A stretch of 64,000 nucleotides of DNA from Callorhinchus milii (Eukaryota): the NCBI RefSeq assembly GCF_018977255.1, contig NW_024704745.1:46376001-46440000 (forward strand), given 5' to 3'. Positions within the stretch are counted from its first letter, which is position 1. The number at the start of each line of letters is the position of its first letter. Below, piece after piece: positions 2,626-35,985 of this stretch. A model generated the notes under the pieces. It was not told the DNA's origin and did not search any database. It saw only the letters and a list, made by a program, of their open reading frames with translations. The translations under genes and the position numbers were made by a program.

Positions 2626-2978
2626 GCTCTAACCACTGAGCTACAGGACATCTATTTAGAGATACCATATAAAGTGTAATTTGTACCTGACTTCAAAAGA
2701 ACACATTTATGAATCAGTTAGGGGATAACCAAAAATTTATTCCACATTTAAAATTATATTTAGAGTTCAGTTACTTCATATTTTGGCTTAATAGGCATGA
2801 AATAATGAAATAAAGTCCTGATCCGTTCTACTGAACTATTCAGGTTGTATAATCCCCAAACAATCTATACAAATATGCTTCCTTTGATTCGCTCACATTT
2901 TTTGCATTTGGTTTTGGTTTGATTGATTCCACTGGCATTTTCAATGTTGTGTTCTATGAAACAAAATAGCAGACTTAC

Positions 2979-3045
2979 CAGTCACAAACAGGAAGCAAAT
3001 AGCAACTGTTTTCACCATGTTCATGAAAAGTCGCTTCCTAATCAT
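2979..3045 (-). CDS. Signal-peptide (leader) exon of a putative second IgSF receptor gene, 'gene B'; remainder expected left of the window
   Basis: First ATG after an in-frame stop; MIRKRLFMNMVKTVAICFLFVT + 1 nt, then a G|GTAAGT donor in phase 1 (67 nt). Start context tggatgat is shared with the gene A leader. Confidence 0.65.
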
Positions 3046-3127
3046 CCAGATATCAAATCAGCTCGAAGTAACACAGGCTTGATTTGTCTCTTAAACAAAA
3101 ACAATAGCACTTGTGGAAAGTCTCGTA

Positions 3128-4300: not shown

Positions 4301-4301
4301 G

Positions 4302-14344: not shown

Positions 14345-14930
14345 CTACATAGAGTCATAGAATTATACAGCACAGAAGGAGGCCATTTGGCCTATTTGGC
14401 CATTTGCCGGCTCTTTGAAAAAAGCTATCCAATTCAATCCCACTCCCCTGCTCTTTCCCCATAGCCCTGCAAACTTGTCCTCCCCAAATAATTGTCTACT
14501 TCTCTCTTAAAAGTTGTTATTGAATCGGCTTCCACCGCCCTTTCAGGCAATGTATTCCAGATCCGAACAACTCGCTGTGTGAAAAAATTTCTCCTCACCT
14601 CCCCTCTGTTTCTTTTAACAACTATTTTAAATTGGTGGCCTCAGGTTACCAACCCACCCGCCAGTGGTAATAGGTTGTCCTTGTTCATCCTATCAAATCC
14701 CCTCATAATTTTGAAAACTTCTATTAAGTCTCCTCTTAACCTTCTCTGCTCCAAGGAGAATAATCCTAGCTTCTCTAGCCTCTCCTGATAACTGTAGTCC
14801 CTCATTCCTGGTACCATCCTGGTAAATCTCCTTTGCACCCTCTCCAATGCCTTGACATCCTTCCTAAAGTGTGGTGCCCAGAACTGAACACAGTACTCTA
14901 GCTGAGGCCTAACCAGTGTTTTATAAAGGG
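14345..14930 (-). mobile_element. CR1 LINE 3' end
   Basis: ORF 14641-14847 [48 protein letters not shown]; catagagtcatagaa tail. Confidence 0.92.
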
Positions 14931-15764
14931 ATTATCATGACATCATAACTTCTAAGATAGCCAAACATTCCTTGCTCCCACCCATCGCTTTAAAAAGAAG
15001 AATTACTACAAGAGAACCTCAGGACTAATTTCTCTGACAGGGCAAAAGTGGAGAACTCCATGACGCTGGAAAACATGTACCTCACAGTTGGGATCAAAAA
15101 GAACATGTTGCTTTATCTGACAAAGTTTGCAAATGTTTCAGATCACAGTTCCCAAAATAAACTCTTTGATTCAGGGACTGCTAAATATTTTAATAGTAAG
15201 TGCCTAAGCATGGCATCAGTAACAATATACCAGTTCTATCCTGCACAATGTTCAATTTATTAAATTATAATGATGCATTTTTGCCTTTAAATAACTGATT
15301 TATTTTCTTTCACAGAAGCAGGGCATAAACTGTCTAATTATACTCATCTGTATTACTTAGCTGGCGTGTCCCTGAAATACATTGCCTGCCAGTCAGTTTC
15401 ATGACCTGTATGCTGTGTAGACCAATCCATTGTAACTGTTTTCTTATTATGTTAAAACCTTTTTACCCTATGTCAATACTATGCCTGTGCTTCCGCTTCT
15501 TCAATTATAATTGGTATATTTTTCTTGAAATATAGCTAACCTCAATGCAATAGAGATTTTTACTCCACATAAAAGTGGATCTGTTATTTAGGAAGGCATA
15601 GTCACCCATGCATTTGATATTGGGTTTTATGATGCCAAAGCATCTTAAAGAGTTTTCCATAAAATGTAATGACTGTGCATTTCTAGGCAAAGCATGGCAG
15701 CAGATTTGCATAGAGCGATATTCCAAATATACCGATGAAGTGAATAATAAGGCTAATTTTTTTA

Positions 15765-16010
15765 ATCTCAGGGATTGTTAGCCAAGTCTCTGGGAGAAAC
15801 TCCCTTCTCTTTTTGATTAATGCCATGGAATCTTTATCATCCACTTAACAGGCAGAGGAGACTTCAATGTAATTCGAAGGGCAGCACCTCTGGTAATACA
15901 ATACTCCACCAGCACTGCATTGAAGTGCCAGGCTAGACTATGAGCTCAAAGACCCAACATTGAGCTTTAATCCACAACCTTTTGACACTGAGGAGAGTGT
16001 GCTTCCAACT
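15765..16010 (-). mobile_element. Old Deu-domain SINE
   Basis: Reverse match to the gatcccatggca...ggagttctcc Deu block. Confidence 0.6.
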
Positions 16011-16284
16011 AAAAGTTAGGGGTGATGTAGGCCGTCAAATAATTAAATTAAATTTGCCCACAAAATACACAGTCAGTCCATTTTACAATATATTCTGTAA
16101 AGTGCTTTAAGACGTCTCAACAATGTGATAAGACGCTATATCAAATGCAAGGATTATTATTATTAAATATTAATTTTAATTTGAGGGATTTCAATAAATT
16201 ATATAGTACATTTAAATGTCACTACCTATTATTAACTGCTCACAGAAGGATGGATTGGATTTATTGTAAATTACTTGATTATAA

Positions 16285-17400
16285 TGGAACATAGGAATGG
16301 GAGAGGTCATTCAGCCCATCAAACTTGTTCCACTAGTTTGTTAGAGCGTGCCAGATCTCTTAATCCCATTTCCTATCTTTTCTCCATTCCCTTTATTATT
16401 TTTACTTTCCATATATCTTTCTGTCTCTTTTTAAAACATTCCCAATTGATTCTGCCTCTGTGACCTTCTGGTGCCCTTCTGTGTGAATAATTGTTTTCTG
16501 ACCTCACTTCAAAACATTTTAGATCTTAATTTTATCAGAGGAATGAGTTGTCCACTGTTCAGGTGATCAATTCCCTTCATGAGTTCAAATAATTCAATCA
16601 CAATTTCCCTTAACTTCCTCAAATCTAAGGAATATAGCCCAAGTCTACTCATCCAAATCCTAACCAATCCCATCATCCCTGGTAGCAATAGAATCAAATG
16701 TTACTGAATGATGTCCAAGGCTAATGTATCCTCTTTAAGATTGGATGCTCACAACTGGAGCAACATTCTCTTTTATATTTTATATTCCTTGTTTTAATGC
16801 CTTGTTTAATTTTAATAGTTTAAAGACTTGGACTCCTAGATCAAATGCTCCATCATTTAATGCATATTCCTACCTGTTATTCTTGCTAGTAATCTCATAC
16901 AAGGCATTTTAAGGCCTTCTGAAAATTCATATAATGATATTCATCAATCCTCTTTTATTTCGTACATCTGTGGGTCTGGCAAAAAACTCTGTGGTTCGGT
17001 CAAATATATCTATTAGGTTTGCCAGGCGTGATCTACATTTTACAAACCATGCTGATTCTCCCTTCTTTGTGCAAATTTATCCAGATGCTCAGTTAGTATG
17101 TCCCTGATGATCGGTTCCAGTAATTTGCCACCTATTATACTCACAGGTCTGTAGATAGTAGATTTGTCCCTTCTTTCTTTCGTGGCATCACATTTGCTGT
17201 TTTCCAATTTTCTGGTATAATTCCCATATCTAGCAATCTTTGGGAATCATAAATAAAGTACAATTTATTCACTTACTTTAATATCCTGGGGTTCAAATCA
17301 TCTGGGCCTGGAGATTTGCCTGACTTCATTCCCATTAGTTTACCCATTACAATTTTTCTGTTTCTATAAAGGCCTATAATATAACCTCTTCCTGGTACCT
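16285..17400 (-). mobile_element. Degenerate CR1 LINE
   Basis: 'SRLGLYSLDLRKLRE.VIELFELMKG' (16509-16697) plus upstream RT remnants. Confidence 0.75.
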
Positions 17401-18243
17401 CTGGTATCAAATTCTACTTCTTCAATTTGAAGACTGAACCAAAATATTTATTTAACTGTACTGCACTTGTGCTACATATACAGTATTTATATTCATATAT
17501 TATATATAAAGTATGTATCAAAGTCTATTTCACTTTAGAAGGACATTCAACTTGAAAGATTCTTACAAAGATATTGTCAGCTAATTAAAAGTAGACTGAA
17601 TAATGCCATTAATATAATTGTACCTCAAATGTTTAAGTCTGTTACAAAGCAAAGTGGGCAGACACAAATGCACAGGGATATAAACATGCTTCCCAAAATG
17701 ATCACAAACATTTCAAGAATGTTAACAATAGCAGTAACCTTACAACAATCTATTACCATAAGTTGTATACAATGTTCTGTAAATCTGCATCAGTTCTCAT
17801 GATCAGAAAGGTGACATTTCATTTTCATGAATGACTGAGCGGTGATCTTTTAGGTGTAATCTTTGCAATCTTTACACCTTCAGAAAGCAATGTCTCTGAA
17901 GCTTTTGGACTGTGAAAGCAGTTGTAACTCAAATTGAAGAGACATTAGCCATGAAGAGGAGGGTCACTTGAGGTAGTATATATTCCTGGTAAACATCAAG
18001 TTGCAAAGGTGGAGAAGGGTCCCTCTACCAAGAAGGCAGTGATGTTTGCTAAAGCTATCTCCAAGCTGGTTGGATTTGCTTGCTGCCCCCTGCCTCTTTC
18101 TGTGGAAGTTTGCCCATTTAGAATGCCATTGTTGAAAGTGTCTGCTCTACCCCTGGTTGTAGGGAAAGTGCCATTGCTTTGAACACTAGGCATTGCCACA
18201 GGAATAGTTGAGGGGCAGGAAACAGTGTGAATCATCAGGGATG

Positions 18244-18830
18244 AACAACAACAACAAAATTACATTTGTAAACACCTTTCAGGTCAGGAGGAAGTCTCAA
18301 GGCGCTGAATGGTCGGGGATCAGGTCTCGAGTGTGGGGGGGGGCAGGGTTGGGATGAGGTGGGCAGAGAGCTAGGAGGGCGGCTGAAGGCATGTTTGAAA
18401 AGGAGGGTCTTGAGTCGTGCCTTGAAGGAGGGAGGAAGCAAGAGGAAGGGATTGTGGGATGGAGTTCCAAAGAACTGGGGCAGAGAGGCTGAGAGCTCAG
18501 ATGCCGATGGTAGGGCGGATCGGGCGGGAGACCTGGATCAGGCTGGAGCTGCTGAACGGAGGGAGAGGATAGGTTAACAGGGGGTCAGCAGGTCAGAGAT
18601 GTAGGAGGGGGTAAGGCCGTGGAGGGCCTTGAAAGTGAGGATGAGGATTTTGAATTCTATCCTGAGGGATGGGAAGCCAGTGGAGCCGGGCGAGGTTGAG
18701 GGTGATGGGGTCCCAGAACCCGATGCGGGAGAGGACACGAGCTGCAGAGTTCTGGATGATCTGCAACTTGCAGAGGGAAGTGTTGCGGAGGCTGACAAGG
18801 AGGGAGTTTCCATAGTCGAGCCTTGAAACA
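18244..18830 (-). mobile_element. L2 3' fragment
   Basis: FVSRLDYGNSLLVSL...IIQNSAARVL; (CAA)n tail at 18245. Confidence 0.9.
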
Positions 18831-19223
18831 AACAAAAAAGCATTCTTTTGTAAATCTTTTAGAGGTTTTATGTTTAGGCAATTTGAAGAGCTGCTTTATG
18901 TTGAACAGTGTCTGCTGTTTTTTCCTGATGGTTTCTCAATGCAGCTATTTTTCATAATGGCTTCTTTCAGACGTTGAGTGTTTGAAGAGTCACCACATCC
19001 CCAGCCTGCCCTCTCCCCGAGTAGAATATCTAGTAAATGTGAACTGGTATGCTGTATATGTCCTAAATGTTAAAATTATTGTGTAGAGAAACTCTTTCTA
19101 TAGCAGCATGGCGAAGGAAGTGGGACTTCTTCATGGCAAAGCATTCTGAAGATCAGCAAAGCAAATGGAGGAGCAGACCTCCCATGGTGCTAATGGATGA
19201 GGAACTATTTTGCCTAAGAGCCA

Positions 19224-19229
19224 TTTATT
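19224..19229 (-). promoter_or_regulatory. Candidate polyadenylation signal of gene A
   Basis: AATAAA on the minus strand about 380 nt downstream of the stop at 19607. Confidence 0.35.
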
Positions 19230-19606
19230 TATGATTAAAGGCAACAATAGAACTATAAAACATGTGAGGATATCTAATAGCTAAAAATAAAGTTTCCCTT
19301 AAAGGACAAGTTACCCTACCTACCTGCTGTGCAATTCACCGTGATTGTCCCTTCTATAGTGAACTGCAGCATGTTTACAGACACATATAGCAGACGTAAA
19401 TCAGCACAAGTCGTAAAGCAATCTTAAATTGTGGACTTTACAGAATAAACTAACAGTGGTATGAACCTCAACTCTTAACGAGGGTCAATAAAGTTTTTAG
19501 GTTGATAATATAGAAATGTTTATACCAGAAAATATGGTTCACAGAATTTCTCTTGGATCTTCAGACAAACTTGTGATATTTTACCCACCAAACTCTGTCA
19601 TTAATG

Positions 19607-19716
19607 TTAATGTTTGGAAGGCAATTTGTGCTTGTTATCCATAATACTCACTTTATGTGGTGTGTAATCACAATTTGCATAGATTGGGTCATCATTGTAT
19701 GGTATTTGCTTATTTT
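19607..19716 (-). CDS. Gene A cytoplasmic exon: (K)NKQIPYNDDPIYANCDYTPHK, then either a donor at 19651 or read-through VSIMDNKHKLPSKH*
   Basis: Strong acceptor tattttgtttttcttaacAG in phase 1, matching the TM exon end; tyrosine motif IYAN; internal AAA|GTGAGT donor after 19652. Confidence 0.8.
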
Positions 19717-20162
19717 CTGTTAAGAAAAACAAAATACAGTACTCATAAATCAATTTGTGAAAACATCTTCCTTGCACTTGATATAATGTCTTGCAATAAT
19801 CCTTCCATTTATTATAGCACCTTATCATATTGCCGAAACATCTCAATCTTCAAAGTCTATGTGCACATTCCCTTGACATCCAATTTTCCATTCATACAGA
19901 ATTTTATGATGCAGGGTAACTCCTGGTTCTAATTCTCCATGGTACAGACATGACTTTGGATCCTGTTACTCCATTTTGTATTGCATTGTTACAGAATGCA
20001 AAATATCTTTGTGGCTATATTATAATAATAATCTTTGCATTTGCTAGAGTTATCATGTCGTTGAGACACCTCAAATCGCTTTTTCTTATTACATTTTAAG
20101 TGCTTAAAGAGACCTGGAAGCAAATTAATGTGAGGAGACAAAGCAATAATGAATGTACTTAC

Positions 20163-20240
20163 TTGGCAATGTTTTTTTCTTGACTTTCCATATCACCATA
20201 GCAAGTATCACAGCTACAGCTACAGCTCCAGCAATTGATA
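20163..20240 (-). CDS. Gene A transmembrane exon: (V)SIAGAVAVAVILAMVIWKVKKKTLP
   Basis: cAG acceptor, A|GTAAGT donor, 78 nt, phase 1-1; hydrophobic helix followed by a basic stop-transfer segment KVKKK. Confidence 0.88.
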
Positions 20241-20274
20241 CTGTTTTGAATTGTATAGATTAATACATCTTACA

Positions 20275-20440
20275 TGAAGACAGTATAGAGTAATAGATGA
20301 TACAGTATATAGGAGCAGGATAGTGTAACACATAATGTATAGGGATAGAATAGAGTAATATGTAATGTACAGAGCCGCGATAGAGTAATAGATGATGCAA
20401 AGAGGCAATAGATAATGCATAGAGGCACTATACTGTAATA
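20275..20440. repeat. Degenerate tandem repeat (tagagtaatagatgat-like units)
   Basis: Several imperfect copies of agtaatagatgat in the intron just before the TM exon. Confidence 0.5.
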
Positions 20441-21657
20441 ATTAATGATTGTAAATTGCAAGTACTGTTTTTATTATTTACTGAATATGGGTGAGGGGAC
20501 TGGAGGCTGTATTAGCAGTGATAATTAACGAAATGCAGTTAAAACATACCTTTGCAACCTACTTTTAACATCAAGTTTGGACTGAACACCACATCCCCCA
20601 CTTCTAGGGAATGTTTTCAGAATCTTAAAGTGCTTCTGTTATAATATTGTAATACACAGTTTTTCTTTCCATTTTGTTACCAACAAAAAGGAGGTATTTG
20701 TGTCAGGCATCAGAGTAATACATTTTAATTTTATTTTCAATCTCATTTCTAAGACAATTTTTTGAGTAATTTAACAGTGTTTCATAGCCTTTCAATGTAT
20801 TACAGTAATTATCAAAACATGCCAATTATGGTCAATGAAAATTATCACAGATCGAGTCTGCAATCATTTGTGTTCAAGGATAAGTGACGACTTTGGGCAG
20901 AACAGCTCTCCTTCCAATTCCAGAAAATAGTTTTTCCCATCAGCTTTTCATCTGCTCATTTGCTTTTAAATTTCAAATGTAACAGCAAGATTTAAATTTT
21001 AAACTCTTTAATTGTTAAGGTTTTATAGTTTGAGAAATAAATGCCATGGAAAGGAGCTTAAGTTAACAGTTTAGTTGTTCAGTGTATATTTAATATCATT
21101 CCTTAACATTGGGGTAACATTTGCAGGGTTCCTTATTCAATGTTGATGTAAACTATCAGGGGGCAGGACTCAGTTCAAACTAAGCAGTTTCTTCCTTTTC
21201 AGAATCTAGTTTTAATTTTATTTTGTTAGATTATTTTCCAGATTATTTGATTTGCCGAGGATGTCTGAAATCCGATAAAATTAACCTTTAGTGTTCCAAT
21301 GGGCTGGGCTCGAAACCTCTACGCCCTTTGTTAACAGTTTTTGGCTGAGGAGAGTGTGAATTTCAGCTTGTTGAAAAATAAATATCTCACAAAAACATTA
21401 ACTTAGAACACAATGCTCTTTTCTTGTACCCTAGAAAAAGCATTCACCATGGATTAAAAAGAAATAAGGCTTGAAAAACAGGCATTCACTTGTCTGAAGG
21501 GTTGGGGTGTTACCTCGCAGGTGCCACAAATTTTACCCTTCTTATTCATAAGGTGTGGACATTAAGATGCATGGTATCAATACACCAGAGTTCGTATGAG
21601 TGACTTAGTGGACATTTAAATAAGTAAAAATTTAAATTGTATTTAAAATATTATCAC

Positions 21658-21714
21658 CTGAGAGGTAGGTTATTAAAGATGTCATATGAAGATGATTCCA
21701 TATATCTTTATCAT
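21658..21714 (-). CDS. Gene A juxtamembrane exon copy b: (D)DKDIWNHLHMTSLITYLS
   Basis: Acceptor actttccttttaatcactAG, donor CAG|GTGATA, 57 nt, phase 1-1, open frame. Confidence 0.55.
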
Positions 21715-21902
21715 CTAGTGATTAAAAGGAAAGTTAACAACAAACAATTTTTAAGGTAATTTTTAAAGCTCTCTGGGATACTATCCCGCTCAAAGGGCTC
21801 TATACAAATGCAAGATGTTGTTCTAGTTGTTTAGATTTCTTATTTTGGATGAATAATTTAGTGAACATTTAAATTAAATTCAAATTGCATTTAAAATATT
21901 AC

Positions 21903-21965
21903 CACCTGAGAGGTAAGCTATTAAAGATGTCATATGAAGATCATTCAACTTATTTTTGTCATCAT
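21903..21965 (-). CDS. Gene A juxtamembrane exon copy a: (D)DDKNKLNDLHMTSLIAYLSG
   Basis: Acceptor actttctttttagtcaatAG; two in-frame donors (after 21906 CAG|GTGGTA, after 21903 G|GTAATA); phase 1-1. LIAYLSG extends the short TM helix of the next exon. Confidence 0.7.
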
Positions 21966-22029
21966 CTATTGACTAAAAAGAAAGTTAACCATAAAAATTT
22001 TCAAGGCTGAGTAGATTCTTATGCAATTA

Positions 22030-25000
22030 ACAACAATAAACAACAACAACTTGCACTTATATAGCGCCCTCCACACAATGTAGAGTCTCAGAGCACTTAA
22101 AGCTGGGGGGAGGGGAGAGTTGGCAGCAGGCATAGTCGAAGAGGAAAGTTTCAGGTGGGATTTGAAAAAGGGGAGAAAGGACAAGGTGGAGGGATTGGGG
22201 GAGAGTGTTCCAGAGTTTCGGAGCATAGTGACTGAAAGCGCGACCTCCAATGGTGGGGCGGAGGGTGCGAGGGATGAGCAGGAGGCACTAGGTGGTGGAT
22301 TGGGGTTTGAGGAGGTTGGAGATATAATAATAATAATAATAATCTTTGCATTTGATATAGCGCTTTTCACATCTTCTAGACGTCCCAAAGCGCTTCACAG
22401 AATATACTGTAAAGTGAATTGACTGTATATTTGTGGGCGAACGCGGCAGCCAATTGCGCTCAGCAATGTCCCACAAACAGTCATGGATTGAAAATGACCA
22501 ATTTATTATTGTTTTTTTTGGAGGGATTATTATTAGGCGTGTGGAGTAAGGAAACTTGCCCAAGGTTTCGCCCTGCCTGGAATTGAACTCAGGTCTCTCA
22601 CTTGCAAAGCGAGTGCTCTAACCACTGAGCTACAGGTAGGGAGTGAATGGATTTGAACACAAGAATGAGGATCTTGAAGTCAATCCATTTGGTGATGGAG
22701 AGCCAGTAGAGCCTGGCCAGAACTGGTGAAATGTGGGTATGGAGTTTGGTCCAAGTCAGCATGCAGGCAGCAGAGTTTTGAATTCACCTTGTGAATGTGG
22801 AGCTAGTGAGACCGGTGAGGAGTGTGTTGGATTATTCCAGGTGGGAGGTGACAAATGCATACACAACGATTTCGGCTGCAAGGTACAGTTGGAGGCGAGC
22901 AATGGGTGGAGGTGGAAGAAAGTGGTACTGGTCAGGACTGGATGTGGGGGAGGAAGGACAGTTGAGGGTCGAACCGGACGTCTAGGTTGCGCACTGGTTA
23001 GTGAGTCTGAGGGAGAGCTCAGGGAAGTTGAGGAGTTTAAATCCGTAGGAATGAAGACGTTGATGGCTTCCGTCTTGTCAATATTCAGCTGCAGGAAGTT
23101 TGTACTCATCCAAGCCTTGATGTCTACCAGACAAGCTGATAGAACATCGGCAGACCTGGAGTTGGTACTGGACGAGGCAAAGTAGATTTGTGTGTCGTCC
23201 GCATACATGGGGAAGTTTATCCCATGTCTGCGGATGACATCACCCAGTGGAAGCATATAAATAAGGAAAAGAAGAGGGGCAAGGATGGAGCCCTGGGGTA
23301 ACCTGTAGCTCACTGGGCGGGGCAGAAGGAGAAACCATTTGCTGAGATGAAATGGAGGCAGTTGGTTAAGTAGGATTCAAACCATGTGAGTGTGGTCCCA
23401 CTAAAGCAGATGAGGGAGGAGAAGCCGTGGAAGAGGATGACGTGGTCGACAGTGTCGAATGCGGCAGAGAGATCCAGGAGGACGAGGAGGCAGAGGGAGC
23501 CCTGGTCACAGATATAGACAATGTCATTTGTGACTTTGACAAGCGCTGTCTCTGTGCTGTGGAAAACCAGACTGCAGGGAATCGAGGAAGAGGTGGAGGG
23601 AGAGGTGCGATTGAAGTTGACCTGCAACAATGCGTTCCAGGACTTTGGCAAGGAAGGGTAGGTTGGAGATGGGACAGTAGTGTGAGAGATTGGAGGGGTT
23701 GAGGGTGTGTTCTTTGAAGAGGGGTGTGATGGCATTGGCTTTCAGGGGCAGTGGAACGGAGCCTGAGGAGAAAGACTGGTTGACTGTGCTGGCCAGCAGG
23801 GGGAGAGAAGGGGTAGTTGATGAACCTCATCCGGGTGATTGCGATTGAGAGGAAGAAGGAAGAAATGAGGGCAAAGGAGTGTAAGGAGAGGGGAGTGGCA
23901 GAAGCCGTGATAGAGGGAGAAGGCTGTGTGGATGGTCTGGGTGGGATGGAAGGGGACATGGTGGGGGTGGAGGACAATGCAGCCAAGCGGATATTTTCAA
24001 TTTTTGAGGGAAAGAAGTCTAGGACCTCTTTGCACTTGGTGTTTGACGTGAGAATAGAGGGGGCTTGAGGGGGTGCACAGAGGAGGTGATGGATGGTGGA
24101 AAACAGTCTTTGGATTGTTGTTTGTCTCCAGGATGACTTTGGAGTAAAAGTCAGTTTTGGCCTGTGAAAGGGAGAGGGTGTAGAAGTGCTCGAACCACAA
24201 CTGGCAGTGAATCGTGAGTCCAGAATTTCTGCCATGTGCGCTCAAGCATCCGGCTTTGTGTTTTGAGTGAGCGGAGATGAATGTTGTACCAGGCGGAGCA
24301 GGTAAGTTTGGAATAGACCCTAGATTTCAGGGGAGCCAGGGAATTTAAGGTTGTGGAGAGACGGTCATTCAGCAGCTTGACAGCTGCATTAGGATGGCTG
24401 CGGGTGGAGGGCCAGAGGGAGAGGAGGTCCGAGGACTCAGGCAGAAGCTTTTTCCAGAGGCGGAAAAAAATGGTGGTGGGCTTGGAAGAGGAGAGGAGGA
24501 TGTGGGAGAGAGGGAGATGGTCCGCGATACCCTGTCCGTGACTGACAGGTCGGAAATGTCAAGGCCATGCGAGATGACAAGGTCGAGGGAATGGCCATGG
24601 TTGTGGGTCAGCAAGTTGATGTGGAGAGTGAGGTTTAAGGAGGAGAGGAGGGCAGTGAAATCCGAGGAGGTGGTGCAAGGGGAGTTTAGGTGGAGGTTGA
24701 AATCACCCATTATTAGCAGGTGTTCAGTGCAGAGGGACAGGGATGAGAGGAGAGAGGAAATATCAGTGAGGAAGGAGCCAGGAGCTTTGGGGGTGGGGGG
24801 GTGCTAAACTAAGAGGATTTTAAGGGAGAGAGTGGAGGGATAGTCGAAGGTGAGGTGTTCAAAGGAGGAGAAATAGCCAGAGGAATAAGGGGATAGAACA
24901 AGGGAAGTTCGGGAGATGAGGGCCACTTTGCTGCCATGTTGGTTGGGGCATGGGGTGTGGTGAAAAGTGTAACCAGGAGGGGAGGCTTTGACGAGGGGGA

Positions 25001-25700
25001 CGGGGTCACCAGGGGAAAGCCAGGTTTCTGTAAGCCCAAGAATATCAATGTGCTCATCCAGGATGAGGTTGTGTATAGTAAGGGCTTTGTTGGAGAGCGG
25101 ATATTTTGGAAGGAAATGCTGATAGGTTTGCTGGTTGTGAGGTGGTGATGAGGAAGGTGGTATAGAGAGGATTTGGGGTGGTGGGGAAGAAGTGACCATG
25201 GAATTTGAGGAGCAGGGAGAGTTGAGGAGGGTACAGATGAGGGAGGGGAAAGGGGTGTTTGCCTTTCAAAGGCGGTTGCTGCAGAGAGAGTGAATGATGG
25301 GACAGTTGAGGTGGCTGATCTGGGACAACCAACGCCGAGAGCATCAATGGGCCTGGTGGAGGATGCCCAGATTGGAACAGAGGGAGGTAATGGTGGGGTC
25401 CACGAGGGAGAGAAGGCAAGGAGGGCGGTGGGAGACAAGGACAGAGTACGAGTAGTGGAATGTGGGGGATGGGAGCAGGAACATTTTCAGGGAGAGTGGC
25501 TCGGATCAGAGCGCAGCCAAAATGGGCACGAGCGATCAGTGGGGCAGCATCGGCCTGCGGGCTATGGGAGACAGGTGCAATGGGAGTTGAGGGGACCTGG
25601 TGGAGCAATGGAGAGGGGATGGCAGTCATAGCTTAGATGCTAGAAACCAGGAGGGAAGGGAGGACCAGGTAGCAGAAGGGTAGTAGAATATACACTATAC
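22030..25700 (-). mobile_element. Near full-length but frameshifted L2 ORF2 (APE endonuclease + RT + 3' tail) in gene A intron
   Basis: EN motifs 'ILGLTETWL' and 'MGDFNLHLN'; RT motifs 'LLDLSAAFDTVDH', 'PQGSILAPLLF' and 'YADDTQIY'; (CAA)n tail near 22040. Confidence 0.95.
22324..22636 (-). mobile_element. Young tRNA-derived SINE (short subfamily) inserted into the L2
   Basis: Complete copy, nearly identical to 1488-1796; L2 sequence continues on both sides. Confidence 0.93.
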
Positions 25701-26630
25701 TTACCCTAGCCTGGCAGATTTGAAAAAAAAACTAACAAGTGTCAACCTGGCACAATCACTAGCACTGTTACATCTGGCTCAGAAGGTCGTGGGTAAATGT
25801 TAGTATTTGAGTTTATAGACCAGGCTGACAGTACAGTGCTGGGGAAAAGCTGCATTGTTGAAGTGCGCCCTTTACATTCGTCAAACTGAATTCCAGTCTA
25901 CCTGCTGGAGATCCAATGACACTATTTTTCTTCTTGTATACAGGCTCACAATTCACCAAAATAAAAATCATTCATTCCTGGATTGTTAGTGGACCTTGCA
26001 GTTTGTAAAATTGGCTGCTTTAGTTGCCTGCTAAAACATAGTACTTAAACAGGAATTACTGTTCCATAGAACCACAGAAATCTACAACACAGTAGGAGGG
26101 ATTCAACAGTGTATTAATATTAGTTCCTTCGATAAAGTCATCTGTCCTAGTCCCAATGTTCTGCTCTTGTACCCTCGAATAACGTTCCACTTCATCTGTT
26201 TATTTACTTACTGTAGAAATCCAAAGAATTCTGCTCCAACACATACCACTGATAAATCATTCCAGACTGATAGTGCTACACTTTATTAGGTGCAAAGTGA
26301 TGACCTATAATATGGAATATGAAACTTACACATTTTGAAAAATATTTGTGGCCGATTAAAAAAATGTAGCTACATATGCATACACATCGGGACCCTATAG
26401 TCGAGTTTGAATACGCTTAAGCGTGGTTTAGGGTTTTGCATGTGTCAAACACTCGGGTGACCCCAAAAATACAAAAATTATCCCCAGAAAGTTTATAAAA
26501 AAGTGCAAATATTCATTTATTTTGTTAAAGGGACAACTCTGCCATGAACTTCAATATGTAAATTTACACTGCTCAAATTAGTTTAGAATACATTTGAAAT
26601 ATTTTTGCAAGTGATTATATATTTTTTTAC

Positions 26631-26969
26631 CTTTTATATCCAAATAGATTTTCTGCACTACTTTTCCTCCTGGAAAACTGTGAACTTGGCAGGAATACCA
26701 GCCTTTGTCAGATTCCTGAGCTTCTTTAATAATAATGGTGACACTGTTTTCGGTGACTTCCAATGTTGCTCTCAGTTTGTATGAAGAATTAAGTATTTTG
26801 TTCACTGGTGGATTGTAGATTGCAATCATTGTGTTGTTATCCTCCTTATTCACCTGAAATTGTACTGGTTTGTTGGAACTTTTACCAGGAGCTTCACATT
26901 GCAGGATAGCTTCATAGCCTTTCACTGCCGTTACATTCATAACACCTTCAATCTGCTGTGTTTCAAAGC
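26631..26969 (-). CDS. Gene A Ig V-set exon, nectin-receptor-like (CD226/CD96/TIGIT group)
   Basis: Acceptor tttctctcttttcaaaatAG, donor G|GTAAAA, 339 nt, phase 1-1. Cys pair 68 residues apart, DKGWYSC (DxGxYxC), 'IAIYNP' and 'HSFPGG' motifs, N-glycan sequons NVT, NNT, NSS. Confidence 0.95.
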
Positions 26970-27039
26970 CTATTTTGAAAAGAGAGAAAATGCAATTACC
27001 ACGACGAACCATATAAATTCTTCTCTAGTAACCCTGGCA

Positions 27040-27290
27040 CAATTTGTAATGCACATCTATGGGACTATTTGAAAAGGGAAGGACGTTCCTCATTTTGTCT
27101 GGCCAATAATCTCCCAAATAAAGTTTATCACTCACTCCATCACTGTTTGTGGGACAAATAGGCTGTCGTGTTTGCCTACAAAATACACACAGTCACACCA
27201 ATTTACATTTACTATGAAGTGCTTTGAGATGTCTTGATGACATGATAAGGTGTTATATCAAATGCAAGAATTATTATACTATTATTATAA
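27040..27290 (+). mobile_element. Deu-domain SINE
   Basis: Deu block and the atcaaatgcaagaattatt tail. Confidence 0.7.
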
Positions 27291-27299
27291 GATTGATTT

Positions 27300-27800
27300 G
27301 AATGAAGGCTCTTCAGCCCATTTGATATCTGCTGTCCTTCCATCACAATATTAAGTTACTTTTAAAATGAGTCCTGACCTCAATCACCTGTCCTGGCAAC
27401 CTATTCCAGTTATTAATTACCCATGCATAAAGAAAAACTTCCTGGTATCAATCCTGAAATTGTCTTTTGCAACTCTAAACCTATGTCCTATTTTTCTTCT
27501 GTCTTGGTACATCCCAAAGTATTGTCTTGGGTTCACTTTTTCAATCCCATTTAATATTTTATACATATCTATGAGTCATTTTCTTTCAAGGCTGAGGAAC
27601 CCTAGTTGTCTAATATTGATCATACCTCATTCTTCTAACACTGGAAATTATCCTAGTAGCTCTTGTCTGCACTGCCTCTCAGGCCTGGCAGCCCCTTTAT
27701 ATCATGGTGACCAGAAGTTATGCAGTATTCAAAGTGAGGTCTGACCTGAGGCCTGAATATGATGTCTGGGGAGCTAAACTTACTTAGCAATATAGCCCAA
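27300..27800 (-). mobile_element. Degenerate CR1 fragment
   Basis: Antisense ORF 27367-27744 resembles the antisense of the CR1 at 14492-14788. Confidence 0.65.
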
Positions 27801-27829
27801 CATCATCTTTGCCTTGTTTAGATTAGATT

Positions 27830-28490
27830 TCAGGTTCGACCCATAGCTGTCTTTCCTACCCCACATCTGGTTCCTGACCAGGATTTCTTTTCTTCATATT
27901 GCCCGCCTGTTTGACCCAGCCACACCCAAAACATTCGGCCATGTGTTTGTCACCTCTCATATCGATTATTCAAATGCCCTCCTCGCCGGTCTCCCCAGCT
28001 CCACCATTCTCAATTCCAGCTGATCCAAAACTTTGCCACCTGCATACATGCCTGCACTAAACTCCATACCCCCATCACACCAGTTCTAGCAAGGCTTCCT
28101 ATCACCAAACAGATTGACTTCAAGATCCTCACACACGTTTTCAAATCCCTTTATGCCCTGGCACCTCCCTACCCTTCGACTTGCTACCTTTCCAACCCAC
28201 AACCCGTTGCCTCCACTCGACTGGCTCTGGCCTTCCACATATCCCTCGTGCCCTCCGTTCCATCAGTGGCCACGCTTTCAGCCACTACGACTGTAACACT
28301 CTTCCTTTATCCCTCCGCCTTGCCCCTCCTTCCCATTTTCAGGTAGCACCTGAAGACCTTCCTCTTCGACCTTGCCTATGGTCACCTTCCCTCTCCTACT
28401 AGCTTGTGTTTGTGCTCCGTCATCGTTAAACGGTCTGGGATGTGACCCTGAGTGATGGGCGCTATATAAATACAGGTTGTTGTTGTTCCT
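27830..28490 (+). mobile_element. L2 3' fragment
   Basis: 'VFVTSHIDYSNALLAGLP' remnant and gggcgctatataaatacaggttgttg tail. Confidence 0.85.
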
Positions 28491-29933
28491 GTTTATTGCT
28501 GCCTCCCACAATTTTGACTTATTAAGTGACGATCTCTTGGTCCCTCTTGGTAAGTTCTATCCTATCCATAGAGTAGTTATGTTTCCTTAAAAAAGTCTAT
28601 GATATAGGTCAGACAAGACCTTCCCTTTCCGAACCCATGTTATCTATCATAGGGTCTTCCTAAAATAAAGAACTTGTAATAGTGTTTCTAAACCAGCTCT
28701 GTTATGTACAAAGTCAAATATTCTATCTCTGTGCCACTGTTAAAGATGTTTGTGTTACACCCTTGTACTTGCAGCAAGCAAGTCAGCATCTAAGACATTG
28801 GAGTTATTGCTGGTCCAAAAGAGAGTTTCTTTGCATTTTACAAATGTACATAAACTTTTTTGTTACAGTAACCAATTTAGCAATGAATGTTATACAAGAC
28901 TTAACCGTCCATTCAATCTACATACAGATTTGTTACATATTTTCCATCTGCACCTTTCAATAAACATCAGCTTTCAAAAGATATGTGAAATGATACTTTT
29001 CAGAAAAAAAACTTTAAAGACTTAGCTGCTGTAACTTTAGAGACTAGAAGCAAGGAGGGTCTGTGTTATAGATGTTAGCAAAACAATCCTTTGACTTGCG
29101 TTGAACCTTCAACAAATGTACGAATACCACAAGAAAGGGGCAGATGCATATCTAAATTGTTTCTGCACATCAGTTGGCATTATCAAGTGTCTTTTTGCAG
29201 TACTATAACATAGCAGTTAGAAATGCTGCTGTTACTCATTTCAAGAACTGTACTAATTAAATTATCAAAACTGCATTTATTTTGCTCATCCATGTATCTG
29301 ACACATGGGGCAGTCCATCATGATGATTAATAGTCTCCAAACAAAACTACTGACAATTCCACATATGTACGGTTTCCATTTGACTGGCACATATTGCGTA
29401 ATTTCTCGTTCTTGCTTCTTTTGAAAATAATCTGTCTACACGTAATCCACAATATCTTTCAATAGTTAAATAAATTAGCTTTGGGTCAATTGTTGAATTC
29501 AGTCCAAACTTTGAAGTGGTTTTCTCAAGAATTTATAGAAAACTGGACTCAGAGTAGACTGTATTTAAGTACTGTAGTTGACAAATTCTGAACTCTCTGA
29601 ATGGTACATTAATCTACTTAAAAATCTAGACCCTAGGTGGAATTTTCCCCCTGAAATAGCAAATAAAAATCCATGGAATTTTAAAAAACAATAACATTAA
29701 GGGAAAACTTCTACACTCTTTACAAAATATACATGGTATAAGTCCAAAGTATGTTACAGCAGTTAAGTGAAGTTCAAGAGTTTGTAGATATGAAAAAAAT
29801 GTGTACATCTGTATTTCAGAATAAAATGTTGAAAACAAAATAGTATTAATCTTACATCTTATTATTTTATTCTGCAAAATGCTATTTGGATTTAAATGGT
29901 TTTCTTGTAGAGTAATAGGAATCGCATACTTAC

Positions 29934-29991
29934 TAAGTCCAAAAAGCACATAGATACCAATGATCTTTAACATCTTGAGCATAGACATCAT
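29934..29991 (-). CDS. Gene A leader exon MMSMLKMLKIIGIYVLFGL(S)
   Basis: ATG to A|GTAAGT donor, 58 nt, phase 1; joins the V exon in frame (A+GC = Ser); hydrophobic core IIGIYVLFGL. Confidence 0.85.
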
Positions 29992-33350: not shown

Positions 33351-33722
33351 TACCTGTAGCTCAATGATTAGAGCACTCGTCTCGCAAGGAGAGGACCTCG
33401 GTTCAATTCCCGAGCAGGCAAAATCTTAGGCAAGTTTCCTTACTCCACACGCCTCTGTTTACCTAGCTGTAAGTAGGAACCCAGTTGTTAATCGATTGAC
33501 GGGTCGCTTTTCCGTAGGTAATAATGCTTTCAAAAAAATATATAATAGTAATTTGGTCACTCAATCCATAACTGTTTGTGGGACACTGTTTGTGTGCAAT
33601 TGGCTGCCGTGTTTCGCCCACAAAATATACAGCCAATTCACTTTGCAGTATATTTTGTGAAGCACTTTGAGATGTTTCGACGATGTGATAAGGCGCTATA
33701 ATAAAAGCAAGAATTATTATTA
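33351..33722 (+). mobile_element. tRNA-derived SINE, long subfamily
   Basis: Same head and tail as the short subfamily plus a 65-nt internal segment (33454-33518). Confidence 0.9.
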
Positions 33723-34684: not shown

Positions 34685-35985
34685 TACAACAACAACAACA
34701 AATTACATTTGTAAAGCATCTTTCATGTTGGCAGGACATCCCAAGCGCTGGCCAGTCAGGAATTGGACCCGAACAGGGGATTGGAACCATGGAGGGTAGG
34801 GGTAGGAGGTTGGCCGAATACGCGATCAAAGAGGAGGGTCTTGAGATGTGCTTCAAGGAGCCAATGGAGGGAGCAAGACAAAGGGACTGGGGATGGAGTT
34901 TCAAAAGGTGGGGGTAGAGAGGCTGAATGCTGGACCGCCAATGGTGGGGCGGGCCGGGTGGGGAAATGGAGCAGGCCAGAGCCTACTGAGCACAGAGGTT
35001 GATATGGGGTTAGAAGGTCACATAGGTAGAAAGAAGCAAGGCCACGGATGGAGGGCCTTGAAGGATTTTGAACTCTATCCTCTGGGGGATGGGGAACCAT
35101 GGAGCCGGGTGGGGGTGATAGGGTTACGGTGCCTGATATAGGAGAGGACATGAGCTGCAGAGTTCTGGATGATCACAGCTTGTGAAGGGAAGCGTTAGAA
35201 GGCTGACAAGCAGGGAAAATTGGTGTAGTCGAGCCTAGAAGTAATAATGCATGAATGAGGGTTTCAGTGGCCTGAGGGGTGAGGCAGTGGCATAGCTGGA
35301 CAATGTTGCGCAGGTGGTGGAAGCACTGATATGGGGATAGAAAGGACAGTTGAGGGTCAAACAAGATGCCAAGGTTCCAGACTGCCTCAGTGAGGTGGAG
35401 TGTGCATCCTTGCAATGAGGTGTGAAGGTGCTGACAGGAGCCAATCACGAGGGCCTCGATTTTGTTGATATTCAACTGGAGAAAGATTGCTCTCATACAG
35501 GACTTGATGTCTGACAGACATTGTGTCGGGACAGCAATGTTCTTGGAGTCGGGGGTGGAGGCAGAGAGAAAGAGTTGGGTGTCATACAAATGCATGTGAA
35601 AGTTTACTCCATATCTGTGGATGAAGTCATCAAGAAGGAGCATATAGATATTGAAGAGGAGCGGACCAAGGACAGAGCCCCGAGGAAAGTTGCAAGAGAT
35701 GGTGCGGAGGCTGGAAGAGAAGCCGTTTGTGGAGATAAAATGGAGACAGTGTGAAAGGTAGAATCTGAACCACTCAAGGACAGAACCATGAAGGCTGAGG
35801 TGAGAGAAGAGAACTGTGGAGGAGGATAGAGCTGTCAGTGGTGTCAAAAGCAGTAGAGAGGTCAAGGAGGATGAGAGGGAGCCCTGGTTACAGATGGACA
35901 AGATGTCATTTGTCACTTTGACCAAGGCTGTTTTTGTGCTTTGGATAGCACGGAACCCGATTGGAGGGGTTCTCAGAGGGAGATT
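34685..35985 (-). mobile_element. L2 LINE fragment (RT + 3' end)
   Basis: 'VKVTNDILSI', 'PRGSVLGPLLFNIYM' and 'HLRNIVQL'. Confidence 0.9.

What the first reader, a model, noticed from the sequence alone, without database searches (positions are those of the whole stretch)
19607..29991. Complete single-V nectin-receptor-like immune receptor gene (TIGIT-like architecture, CD226-like tail) in a probable cartilaginous fish
Six GT-AG exons join in frame into a ~215-aa type I protein (234 aa with both stalk exons): signal peptide, one V-set domain, short stalk, uncharged TM helix and a ~44-aa tail. The V domain has nectin/PVR-family hallmarks (AIYNP, F-strand SFPGG matching T[F/Y]PxG). CD226 has two Ig domains and CD96 three; a single-V member of this group resembles TIGIT/PVRIG, which are best characterised in mammals. 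Only the V exon stands out in the ORF track, so the gene may be poorly annotated. I cannot tell whether it has been described.
Basis: partly seen in the sequence, partly recalled or inferred. Interest (0 to 1): 0.85.

Follow-up and report, generated by a model that had tools for sequence, protein, structure and literature searches.

The report
Elephant-shark TIGIT-like paired receptor gene
The interval holds a real, intact elephant-shark gene for a one-domain TIGIT-like surface receptor, and it is one half of an ancient tandem pair whose ligand-binding exons are kept nearly identical while their signalling tails differ, so a TIGIT/CD226-style "same ligand, two signals" arrangement appears to predate the split of chimaeras and sharks.

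Summary
The window is Callorhinchus milii scaffold MU249835.1 (46,376,001-46,440,000). The gene is already annotated but unnamed: NCBI LOC103184848 and Ensembl A0A4W3HS01.

The V domain belongs to the nectin/PVR V-domain group. Human TIGIT is the best single-domain sequence match, and about the top 45 Foldseek hits are nectins, CD96, TIGIT, PVRIG and PVR. NCBI's pipeline calls most elasmobranch relatives "TIGIT-like".

The new finding is that this gene ("type A") is one half of a tandem pair. About 14-16 kb downstream on the same strand lies LOC103184826 ("type B"). The V exons of the two genes are 95% identical in DNA. Their introns do not align, and their leaders, TM regions and tails are no more than weakly similar.

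Horn shark has the same A-then-B pair with the same V-exon-only homogenisation. White shark shows it at protein level. In zebra shark the two V domains are only 75% identical.

Type B has mouse Tigit's four-exon layout and a C-terminal DYxx(V/M) motif. Type A has a CD226-like IYxN motif.

The V-domain phylogeny cannot decide between TIGIT and CD226 affinity. Synteny, expression and ligand were not testable here. I rate it a new variant of a known kind, of moderate to good interest.

The parts
29934..29991 (-). Exon 1: start codon and signal peptide (MMSMLKMLKIIGIYVLFGLS). NCBI starts at the second ATG, 29988.
   Evidence: Donor TTA|gtaagt. 100% tblastn match to P0001 and P0002. The leader resembles shark type A leaders (..AVMKML..FAIYMLFVSG).
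26631..26969 (-). Exon 2: the single V-set Ig domain, in splice phase 1-1. It has 3 N-glycosylation sequons, the canonical Cys pair, the F-strand motif SFPGG, and Val in place of the canonical strand-C Trp.
   Evidence: Pfam V-set scores 34.1 bits against a cut-off of 26. AF2 gives pLDDT 89. The exon is 95% identical in DNA to the paralog's V exon (17 of 339 nt differ; 96.2% over the 338-nt BLAST tract).
21903..21965 (-). Stalk exon, copy A (DDDKNKLNDLHMTSLIAYLSG), with a canonical GT donor.
   Evidence: It is homologous to the stalk of shark type A proteins (..NHLHMRNLSIYLS).
21658..21714 (-). Stalk exon, copy B (DDKDIWNHLHMTSLITYLS). The donor is shifted to CAG|gtgata. This is the copy used in the NCBI model.
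   Evidence: It is part of a ~250-bp tandem duplication (22006-21849 versus 21756-21596, 81.7% identical).
20163..20240 (-). TM exon (VSIAGAVAVAVILAMVIW plus KVKKKTLP). It is uncharged.
   Evidence: It is conserved in shark type A proteins (VSIVGAAVVIMIVALVIWKMKRKP).
19607..19716 (-). Cytoplasmic exon with the P-I-Y-A-N-C (YxN) motif and the TAA stop at 19609-19607. An internal alternative donor (AAA|gtgagt) lies after 19652.
   Evidence: The Ensembl model reads through to the stop. The NCBI model splices out after ..TPHK.
17040..17237 (-). Alternative terminal exon used only in the NCBI model (66 aa). It lies in a decayed non-LTR retrotransposon reverse-transcriptase fragment.
   Evidence: tblastn match is 100%. 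The acceptor AG is at 17239-17238. The sequence just upstream reads GKSPGPDDLNPRILK, and the exon contains YRPVS..GKLLE..QHGL. Recognising these as reverse-transcriptase motifs is from general knowledge. Pfam finds no family for this exon.
2977..3045 (-). Exon 1 of the tandem partner gene, type B (LOC103184826). The rest of that gene lies beyond the left edge of the window.
   Evidence: tblastn match to P0003 residues 1-23 is 100%. Locus L001 holds the remaining exons: V, stalk+TM, and cytoplasmic.
22700..25630 (-). Context: a degenerate LINE (endonuclease plus reverse transcriptase) in sense orientation. It fills most of the V-to-stalk intron. There is no Ig exon here.
   Evidence: Pfam Exo_endo_phos (E = 9.5e-08) and RVT_1 (E = 7.4e-13) on the ORFs.

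Best explanation
The interval is an intact protein-coding gene of the elephant shark, LOC103184848.

What it encodes. The product is a ~213-215-aa type I membrane receptor. It has a signal peptide, one V domain of the nectin/PVR type, a short stalk, an uncharged TM helix, and a 44-aa tail carrying a P-I-Y-A-N-C (YxN) tyrosine motif.

The pair. This gene is the upstream member ('type A') of a head-to-tail gene pair conserved in cartilaginous fishes. The downstream member ('type B', LOC103184826) has a V exon that is 95% identical in DNA. Its introns do not align with those of type A, and its leader and TM/tail are at most weakly similar (27% and 18% identity). Type B has the four-exon layout of mouse Tigit and a C-terminal DYxx(V/M) tyrosine like TIGIT's ITT-like motif.

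Most likely mechanism. Both proteins bind the same nectin/Necl-type ligand through the shared V face. Recurrent V-exon gene conversion keeps that face matched. The two then deliver different signals. Type A would signal through phospho-YxN recruiting a Grb2-type adaptor, which is CD226-like and probably co-stimulatory. Type B would signal through a TIGIT-like tail.

Shown: gene structure, V-domain family, the tandem pair, its conservation, and V-exon-restricted concerted evolution.

Inferred: ligand, cell type, adaptor use and the sign of signalling.
For: Gene model. Public models.

V-domain family:
- Pfam V-set, 34.1 bits.
- PDB phmmer: CD226 D1 at 2e-7 and TIGIT at 1e-6.
- A profile of six chondrichthyan V domains gives human TIGIT as the best single domain, 47.9 bits over the whole V. 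Mouse CD226 D1 scores 38.8 and nectin-1 reaches E = 1e-10.
- The AF2 model (pLDDT 89, pTM 0.81) has about its top 45 Foldseek PDB hits among nectin-1/-2/-3/-4, CD96, TIGIT, PVRIG and PVR. TIGIT matches have rmsd 1.6-1.9 A and TM 0.84-0.86.

The pair in C. milii:
- The partner's exon 1 is at 3045-2977 on the same strand.
- DNA similarity between the two genes is confined to the V exon: 96.2% over 338 nt, with no collinear intron match.
- dN 0.035, dS 0.107, dN/dS 0.32.

Conservation across species:
- Twenty chondrichthyan proteins fall into two tail types.
- Within a species, A and B V domains are 92% (C. milii), 94% (horn shark), 97% (white shark) and 75% (zebra shark) identical. Their TM/tails are only 18-33% identical. 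The same tail type is 27-67% identical between species.
- Horn shark has A upstream of B on one strand, 68 kb apart. Its V exons are 97.9% identical, and similarity decays to background within ~150 bp of intron.
- A fused zebra-shark model (P0136) runs A then B.
- In trees the V domains cluster by species, not by type (99/97 for the whole clade).

Exon layouts: type B and mouse Tigit both have leader / V / stalk+TM / cytoplasmic exons, whereas type A has separate stalk, TM and cytoplasmic exons.

Tail motifs: P[ILF]YxN[VC] is conserved in type A. It matches the distal (D/E)x[IV]YxN of CD226 tails.
Against: - No expression or ligand data are available here.
- The three PVR-family signature motifs are only partly kept: QFQ instead of (V/I)(S/T)Q, A-x6-N instead of A-x6-G, and SFP instead of T(F/Y)P.
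- The canonical strand-C Trp is Val in both C. milii genes.
- Neither C. milii tail has a canonical ITIM. Neither TM has a charged residue, so this is not a classical ITIM/DAP12 pair.
- Tail resemblances to CD226 and TIGIT are short linear motifs only. hhalign probabilities are 30% and 2.4%.
- The V-domain phylogeny does not resolve TIGIT versus CD226 affinity. AU p = 0.28 and 0.32.
- In mammals a phospho-YxN motif on TIGIT is inhibitory, so the sign of type A signalling cannot be read from the motif.
- C. milii type A lacks the second YENV exon that sharks have, and no such exon was found downstream. Its stalk exon is duplicated with one damaged donor. This copy may therefore be partly degenerating.
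Confidence: 0.6

Rival explanations
1. Types A and B are simply two lineage-specific co-orthologues of TIGIT. On this view the window gene is an inhibitory TIGIT whose YxN acts like TIGIT's ITT-like motif (Grb2/SHIP1), not a CD226-like activator.
For: TIGIT is the best single-domain match. The gene has a single-V architecture. NCBI names most relatives TIGIT-like. The free tree puts the clade nearest a group that includes mammalian TIGIT, but with weak support, 51/79. A YxN motif is present.
Against: Leader, stalk, TM, tail and exon number of type A differ from both Tigit and type B. Both tail types are older than the chimaera/shark split. There is no ITIM. The AU test does not favour TIGIT over CD226.
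Confidence: 0.25
2. Type A is the cartilaginous-fish counterpart or orthologue of CD226. It would have lost its second Ig domain, and its first-domain exon would have been overwritten by gene conversion from the neighbouring TIGIT-like gene.
For: The distal tail motif DDPIYANC resembles EDPIYANW, EDIYINV, EGIYVNF and RPVYANI in CD226 tails. Shark type A and fish CD226 tails both have a two-tyrosine layout. Type A has a separate TM exon and split cytoplasmic exons, as in snake CD226. CD226 D1 is the top whole-sequence PDB hit. The AU test does not reject a clade with CD226 D1 (p = 0.32).
Against: The profile comparison aligns only 7 tail columns at 30% probability. The exon contents of the tails differ. 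No remnant of a D2 exon is present. Whether chondrichthyans also have a two-Ig CD226 was not determined.
Confidence: 0.15
3. The V domain is nectin-like in fold only. On this view the pair is a lineage-specific paired receptor for some other ligand, self or pathogen-derived, kept matched by gene conversion under host-pathogen pressure.
For: The signature motifs are degenerate, and sharks lack the key Gln. V domains diverge fast between species (37-68% identity) while staying matched within species. Insect DIP domains score almost as well as TIGIT.
Against: About the top 45 structural neighbours are nectin-family V domains. T(F/Y)PxG and A(I/V)Y(N/S)P are retained.
Confidence: 0.2
4. The window copy is a decaying duplicate or a non-functional gene that annotation pipelines stitched together.
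For: The core Trp is lost. The TFP motif has Thr replaced by Ser. The second tyrosine exon is missing. The stalk exon is duplicated with a damaged donor. The NCBI model has a retrotransposon-derived terminal exon.
Against: All exons are open and all junctions canonical. dN/dS is 0.32 against the partner. The Trp loss is shared by the partner gene. The V domain folds confidently in AF2. Type A is conserved in sharks.
Confidence: 0.07

Closest known systems
TIGIT (T-cell immunoreceptor with Ig and ITIM domains), mammals
   Same: One IgV domain of the nectin/PVR type, a short stalk, a single uncharged TM and a tyrosine-motif tail. TIGIT is the best single-domain sequence match (47.9 bits) and the lowest-rmsd structural match (1.6-1.9 A). 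The YxN motif resembles TIGIT's ITT-like motif. The partner gene (type B) shares mouse Tigit's four-exon layout and a C-terminal DYxx(V/M).
   Different: There is no ITIM. The (V/I)(S/T)Q and AX6G motifs are degenerate. The window gene has extra stalk, TM and cytoplasmic exons and an unrelated TM/tail. The V-domain tree does not show orthology. Synteny was not tested.
CD226 (DNAM-1)
   Same: It has the distal tail motif (D/E)x(I/V)YxN, with DDPIYANC here against EDPIYANW, EDIYINV and EGIYVNF in CD226 of bony vertebrates. The A(I/V)YNP motif occurs in the V domain. It is proposed to oppose TIGIT on shared ligands.
   Different: CD226 has two Ig domains, whereas this gene has one. Tail similarity is 7 columns only. 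In mammals CD226 is unlinked to TIGIT, whereas here the two partners are adjacent and share a V exon sequence.
Classical paired receptors with gene-converted ectodomains (e.g. SIRP alpha/beta, PILR alpha/beta, CD200R/CD200RLa, KIR; named from general knowledge)
   Same: Adjacent genes have near-identical ligand-binding domains and unrelated TM/tails. Homogenisation is limited to the ectodomain exon.
   Different: Neither member has a charged TM residue for DAP12/FcR-gamma, and the C. milii partner has no canonical ITIM. Both members carry their own tyrosine motifs. The pair appears to be about as old as the chimaera/shark split.
Predicted elasmobranch proteins, variously named 'TIGIT-like', 'CD226 antigen-like', 'nectin-1-like' or 'uncharacterized' (NCBI automated annotation)
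   Same: They are direct relatives. Type A members are P0005, P0009, P0145 and P0147. Type B members include P0137, P0013, P0138-P0144 and P0146.
   Different: They are 31-43% identical to the C. milii protein. Sharks keep the strand-C Trp and a second YENV exon. Their names are best-hit labels and are inconsistent between species. I found no experimental description.

Membership tests
Immunoglobulin V-set domain (Pfam PF07686) | Profile match above the curated cut-off | tested here: met
   34.1 bits against a cut-off of 26, E = 3.3e-08, residues 31-121.
Immunoglobulin V-set domain (Pfam PF07686) | Canonical B-F disulfide cysteines and the strand-C tryptophan | tested here: inconclusive
   Cys24 and Cys93 of the V domain are invariant in a 63-sequence alignment. 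The column that is Trp in at least 90% of rows is Val39 here, as it is in the partner gene. AF2 still gives pLDDT 89.
Nectin/PVR-family V domain (nectins, PVR, TIGIT, CD226, CD96, PVRIG) | Nearest sequence and structure neighbours are members of this group | tested here: met
   PDB phmmer and profile: CD226, TIGIT, nectin-1, CD96. About the top 45 Foldseek hits are nectin-1/-2/-3/-4, CD96, TIGIT, PVRIG and PVR. Caveat: the AF2 alignment contained TIGIT and CD226 sequences.
Nectin/PVR-family V domain | Signature motifs (V/I)(S/T)Q, AX6G and T(F/Y)P (motif definitions from the TIGIT literature, recalled) | tested here: inconclusive
   In the HMMER alignment to TIGIT, VTQ aligns with QFQ (only Gln kept), A-x6-G with A-IYNPPV-N, and TYP with SFP. 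The partner gene and the older assembly have TFP. Sharks keep T(F/Y)P only.
Nectin/PVR-family V domain | Binds a nectin/Necl ligand | not testable with these tools
   This needs recombinant ectodomain binding assays.
TIGIT orthologue | Single IgV, TM and cytoplasmic tail | tested here: met
   No further Ig exon is present.
TIGIT orthologue | ITIM (S/I/V/L)xYxx(I/V/L) in the tail | tested here: not met
   The tail is KVKKKTLPKNKQIPYNDDPIYANCDYTPHKVSIMDNKHKLPSKH. None of its three tyrosines fits an ITIM (direct reading). The partner's tail has none either.
TIGIT orthologue | ITT-like YxN tyrosine | tested here: met
   YANC is present here. It is conserved as P[ILF]YxN[VC] in type A proteins.
TIGIT orthologue | Gene layout of leader / V / stalk+TM / cytoplasmic (four coding exons) | tested here: not met
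   Mouse Tigit has four coding exons and the partner type B has the same four. The window gene has separate stalk, TM and tail exons, and horn-shark type A has six coding exons.
TIGIT orthologue | V domain is sister to TIGIT in a phylogeny | tested here: inconclusive
   The chondrichthyan clade has support 99/97 and mammalian TIGIT 100/100, but the backbone is unresolved (51/79). Forcing chondrichthyan+TIGIT costs 4.06 lnL (AU p = 0.28). Forcing chondrichthyan+CD226 costs 2.30 lnL (p = 0.32). Only placental TIGIT sequences were available.
TIGIT orthologue | Conserved synteny (in human, TIGIT lies between DRD3 and ZBTB20; recalled) | not testable with these tools
   No other gene is called within 10 kb of either gene, a span covering record 46,355,702-46,415,988. 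Neighbours further away could not be listed.
CD226 orthologue | Two Ig domains | tested here: not met
   There is one V exon only.
CD226 orthologue | Homologous TM/cytoplasmic region with the distal (D/E)x(I/V)YxN motif | tested here: inconclusive
   The motif is present. hhalign aligns 7 columns at 30% probability.
Paired receptors (two genes, one ectodomain, two signals) | Adjacent genes with near-identical ligand-binding domains and unrelated TM/tails, kept alike by gene conversion | tested here: met
   C. milii: 96.2% over 338 nt of the V exon only. Horn shark: 97.9% in the exon, decaying within ~150 bp. Identity table. V domains cluster by species.
Paired receptors | One member has an ITIM, and the other has a charged TM residue that recruits an ITAM adaptor | tested here: not met
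   Both TM segments are uncharged, and the C. milii tails have no canonical ITIM.

The most novel reading that the evidence does not exclude
The mammalian TIGIT/CD226 axis is two receptors with opposite signals competing for the same nectin-family ligands. It may have begun as a tandem paired-receptor locus in the jawed-vertebrate ancestor. Cartilaginous fishes would still keep that state: a TIGIT-type gene and a CD226-tailed gene side by side, with the ligand-binding exon kept matched by gene conversion for roughly 400 million years. Bony vertebrates would later have separated the two genes, and CD226 would have gained or kept a second domain.
Probability: 0.22. Interest if true: 0.8.

Novelty: new variant of a known kind. 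Interest (0 to 1): 0.58.

Why it matters
A 2026 survey of human IgSF families lists CD96, CD226 and TIGIT among families first seen in amniotes (PMC13262535, Table 1). I found no paper in the held library describing a cartilaginous-fish TIGIT or CD226. This locus places a TIGIT-type receptor at or before the chimaera/shark split. It also shows the receptor organised as a matched pair, so one ligand-binding module feeds two different tails.

That offers a concrete model for how checkpoint/co-stimulator pairs that share ligands arise. It also offers a clean natural example of exon-restricted concerted evolution. It can be tested directly with binding assays, phosphopeptide pull-downs and single-cell expression.

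The practical value is modest. It would allow better naming of a family that pipelines currently label TIGIT-like, CD226-like, nectin-1-like or uncharacterized.

Tried and rejected
- AF2 on the full-length protein with a 6-sequence alignment gave pLDDT 54.6 and was not used. It was replaced by a V-domain model from 63 sequences.
- V-domain trees, quick and careful, left the backbone unresolved. Two arthropod DIP-like sequences attached to the clade as long branches and were removed. AU tests rejected neither TIGIT nor CD226 affinity.
- Profile-profile comparison of tails gave only short-motif matches: type A with CD226, and type B with TIGIT. The two controls, type A against TIGIT tails and type B against CD226 tails, gave no motif match. 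So tail homology is not claimed.
- I searched 3,000-20,300 for a lost second YENV exon and found nothing.
- Pfam on the NCBI-only terminal exon found no family. Its retrotransposon origin rests on reading the flanking sequence.
- I searched with human TIGIT. Only the best 120 hits were listed and all were placental, so no bird, reptile, amphibian or fish TIGIT was obtained.
- Synteny could not be tested. The look-up tool shows only 10 kb flanks, and no neighbour genes are called there.
- I tried to learn whether the CD226-clade hits include chondrichthyans. P0045 is not on record. P0073 comes from assembly GCA_001077635.2, which I believe is a garter snake, though that is from memory.
- The idea of an extra Ig exon, which would make this an ordinary CD226 or CD96, was rejected.
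- A call with a mis-framed reference failed.

Full report
**1. Observation**

- 29991-29934: leader.
- 26969-26631: V domain.
- 21965-21903 and 21714-21658: two copies of a stalk exon.
- 20240-20163: TM.
- 19716-19607: tail, ending in TAA.

Every junction is GT-AG. For stalk copy B the usable donor is CAG|gtgata. The exons join in frame to 215 aa with stalk A, 213 aa with stalk B and 234 aa with both, and the tail is 44 aa. The TM segment is uncharged. The window has no N. No other Ig exon lies in the introns. The long ORFs between the V and stalk exons are a sense-oriented LINE, with Exo_endo_phos and RVT_1 matches.

**2. Where it is and what is annotated**

The predicted protein matches two public models from Callorhinchus milii:
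- NCBI 'uncharacterized protein LOC103184848', 263 aa.
- UniProt/Ensembl A0A4W3HS01, 194 aa.

The window is GCA_018977255.1 scaffold MU249835.1, positions 46,376,001-46,440,000.

Both models share the leader, V, TM and tail-exon junctions. The Ensembl model skips the stalk. The NCBI model uses stalk copy B, leaves the tail exon at an internal donor (AAA|gtgagt after 19652), and ends in an exon at 17237-17040. That exon lies inside a decayed retrotransposon reverse-transcriptase fragment. The sequence just upstream reads GKSPGPDDLNPRILK and the exon carries YRPVS..GKLLE..QHGL. Pfam itself finds nothing there.

Shark relatives all have one stalk segment. The stalk is therefore real, and the stalk-less Ensembl model is probably incomplete or a minor isoform.

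**3. Family of the V domain**

- Pfam V-set is above threshold.
- Against all PDB sequences the best matches are mouse CD226 and human TIGIT.
- A profile of six chondrichthyan V domains gives human TIGIT as the best single domain, 47.9 bits across the whole V. Mouse CD226 D1 scores 38.8, insect DIP-eta 38.1, and nectin-1 reaches E = 1e-10.
- An AF2 model built from 63 aligned relatives is confident, with pLDDT 89 and pTM 0.81.
- About the top 45 Foldseek hits of that model in the PDB are nectin-1/-2/-3/-4, CD96, TIGIT, PVRIG and PVR V domains. TIGIT gives the lowest rmsd, 1.6-1.9 A.

The three motifs usually quoted for this family are only partly kept. VTQ is QFQ, A-x6-G is A-x6-N, and T(F/Y)P is SFP here. 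The partner gene and the older assembly have TFP.

The strand-C tryptophan is present in at least 90% of the aligned relatives. It is Val in both C. milii genes.

**4. The neighbour and the pair**

tblastn with the paralog LOC103184826 (225 aa) places its first exon at 3045-2977 on the same strand. That is 14-16.5 kb downstream of the window gene. Its other exons lie beyond the window edge in locus L001.

The two proteins are 92% identical in the V domain but only 18% identical in TM and tail. At the DNA level the only collinear similarity between the two genes is the V exon itself, 96.2% over 338 nt. Everything else that matches is dispersed repeats. Between the two V exons dS is 0.107 and dN/dS is 0.32.

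**5. The pair is old**

A profile search recovers 20 chondrichthyan proteins and nothing else at that level. They fall into two types.

Type A resembles the window gene:
- Stalk ..HMR..YIS.
- TM ..VIWKxKRK.
- Tail MP[FL]YENV plus S[VI]YENVD.
- Found in horn shark, bamboo sharks, white shark, and the first half of a fused zebra-shark model.

Type B resembles the partner:
- Tail HQRKSRVNIPNQINIILKN ... D[ND]Y[MLF][NS]V at the C-terminus.
- Found in thirteen species, including rays and skates.

Identities follow a consistent pattern:
- Within a species, A and B V domains are 94% identical in horn shark, 97% in white shark and 75% in zebra shark.
- The same tail type is 27-67% identical between species.
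- A and B tails are 18-33% identical.

In the horn shark, A lies upstream of B on one strand, 68 kb apart. Its V exons are 97.9% identical. The flanks are 77-80% identical for about 100-150 bp, and beyond that they are at background.

In trees all A and B V domains form one clade (99/97) and group by species rather than by type.

I read this as two ancient genes whose V exon, and only that exon, is repeatedly homogenised by gene conversion.

**6. Relation to TIGIT and CD226**

Type B has the same four coding exons as mouse Tigit: leader, V, stalk+TM and cytoplasmic. It also has a C-terminal DYxx(V/M), which hhalign aligns to TIGIT's HDYFNV, though only at 2.4% probability.

Type A has separate stalk, TM and cytoplasmic exons; the horn shark gene has six coding exons. 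Its conserved P[ILF]YxN[VC] motif resembles the distal (D/E)x(I/V)YxN of CD226 tails from lungfish, sturgeon and other bony vertebrates. DDPIYANC here compares with EDPIYANW, EDIYINV and EGIYVNF. The profile comparison supports only those 7 columns, at 30% probability.

Neither C. milii tail has a canonical ITIM.

The V-domain phylogeny does not decide. The free tree puts the clade next to a group containing mammalian TIGIT with weak support (51/79). AU tests reject neither a clade with TIGIT (p = 0.28) nor one with CD226 D1 (p = 0.32). Because the V exon is shared by conversion, it cannot separate the histories of A and B in any case.

**7. How it most likely works**

What is shown is a type I receptor with a nectin-family V domain and a YxN tail, paired with a gene that has the same binding domain and a different tail.

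From the known behaviour of TIGIT and CD226, I infer that both bind the same nectin/Necl-type ligand on neighbouring cells. Tyrosine phosphorylation of the type A YxN would recruit a Grb2-type adaptor, and type B would signal through its own C-terminal tyrosine. The cell would then read one ligand through two channels, and gene conversion would keep the two specificities matched. The sign of each signal cannot be inferred, because a phospho-YxN motif is inhibitory on TIGIT and activating on CD226.

A white-shark isoform lacks the TM exon (P0148). The TM exon is also in-frame here (78 nt), so a soluble form is possible.

**8. Features peculiar to the C. milii copy**

- The stalk exon and its flanks are tandemly duplicated: 22006-21849 against 21756-21596, 81.7% identical.
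- The second cytoplasmic exon of sharks, which carries the second YENV, was not found downstream. The tail either reads through to a stop 14 codons later or splices to the retrotransposon-derived exon.
- The window has SFP where the older assembly and the partner gene have TFP.

These features fit either mild degeneration or lineage-specific remodelling. dN/dS of 0.32 and intact junctions argue against a pseudogene.

**9. Known or new**

The gene is annotated but unnamed. NCBI's pipeline labels its relatives TIGIT-like, CD226 antigen-like, nectin-1-like or uncharacterized. Automated CD226 annotations exist for lungfish, coelacanth, sturgeon and a teleost.

In the held literature I found no description of a cartilaginous-fish or teleost TIGIT. 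A 2026 survey lists CD96, CD226 and TIGIT among amniote-age families.

The conserved tandem pair with V-exon-only concerted evolution is, as far as I can tell, undescribed. I class the finding as a new variant of a known kind.

**10. Limits**

- There are no expression, ligand or synteny data.
- The TIGIT references were placental mammals only.
- The AF2 alignment contained TIGIT and CD226 sequences, which may bias the model towards that fold family.
- Motif definitions and the human gene order are recalled from general knowledge.

Noticed in passing
window 2977-3045 (-), continuing in L001: This is the first exon of a second gene, LOC103184826 (type B). Its V exon is ~95% identical in DNA to the one in the finding, but the rest of the gene differs.
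   Followed up: yes
window 21596-22006 (-): A ~250-bp tandem duplication contains the stalk exon (81.7% identity). Copy B has lost the original GT donor and uses one 3 nt upstream.
   Followed up: partly
window 17040-17237 (-): The terminal exon of the NCBI model lies inside a decayed LINE reverse-transcriptase fragment. It is either an exonised transposon or an annotation artefact.
   Followed up: partly
window 22700-25630 (-); also 9760-10065 (-) and 35176-35925 (-): Degenerate non-LTR retrotransposon ORFs (endonuclease, reverse transcriptase) are present. One fills the V-to-stalk intron in sense orientation.
   Followed up: partly
window 22568-22639 (-), 4293-4365 (-), 55877-55946 (+), 44663-44734 (+), 33353-33418 (+): These are tRNA-like sequences (Ala-TGC, Thr-CGT). 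The one in the intron is followed by a conserved core (..gtgaagcgctttgggac..gtgaaaagcgctatatcaaatgcaa..) and an (att)n tail. They are probably tRNA-derived SINE heads rather than tRNA genes.
   Followed up: no
window 26631-26969 (-), V-domain residue 39; L001 V exon: Both C. milii genes have Val where at least 90% of relatives, including all sharks and rays examined, have the canonical strand-C Trp. AF2 still folds the domain confidently.
   Followed up: partly
window ~26679-26681 (-), codon 97 of the V exon: The window and the NCBI model have AGT (Ser, giving SFP). The Ensembl protein from the older assembly and the partner gene have Thr (TFP). This is either a polymorphism or the trace of a conversion event in the key F-G loop motif.
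   Followed up: no
related proteins P0136 (Stegostoma), P0148 (Carcharodon), P0004 (Amblyraja): P0136 is a fused A-then-B gene model in zebra shark. P0148 is a TM-less, probably soluble type A isoform in white shark. P0004 is a 1,554-aa 'hemicentin-2-like' thorny-skate model with 13 matching stretches, possibly a mis-joined cluster of such V exons.
   Followed up: no
teleost proteins P0029, P0063, P0064, P0067, P0112, P0120: These are single-V teleost receptors, unnamed where names were looked up. They keep the (V/I)TQ and T(F/Y)P-type motifs (P0029 also has a full AX6G), and their full-length tails carry ITIM-like VTYxxV motifs. They may be bony-fish counterparts of this family.
   Followed up: no
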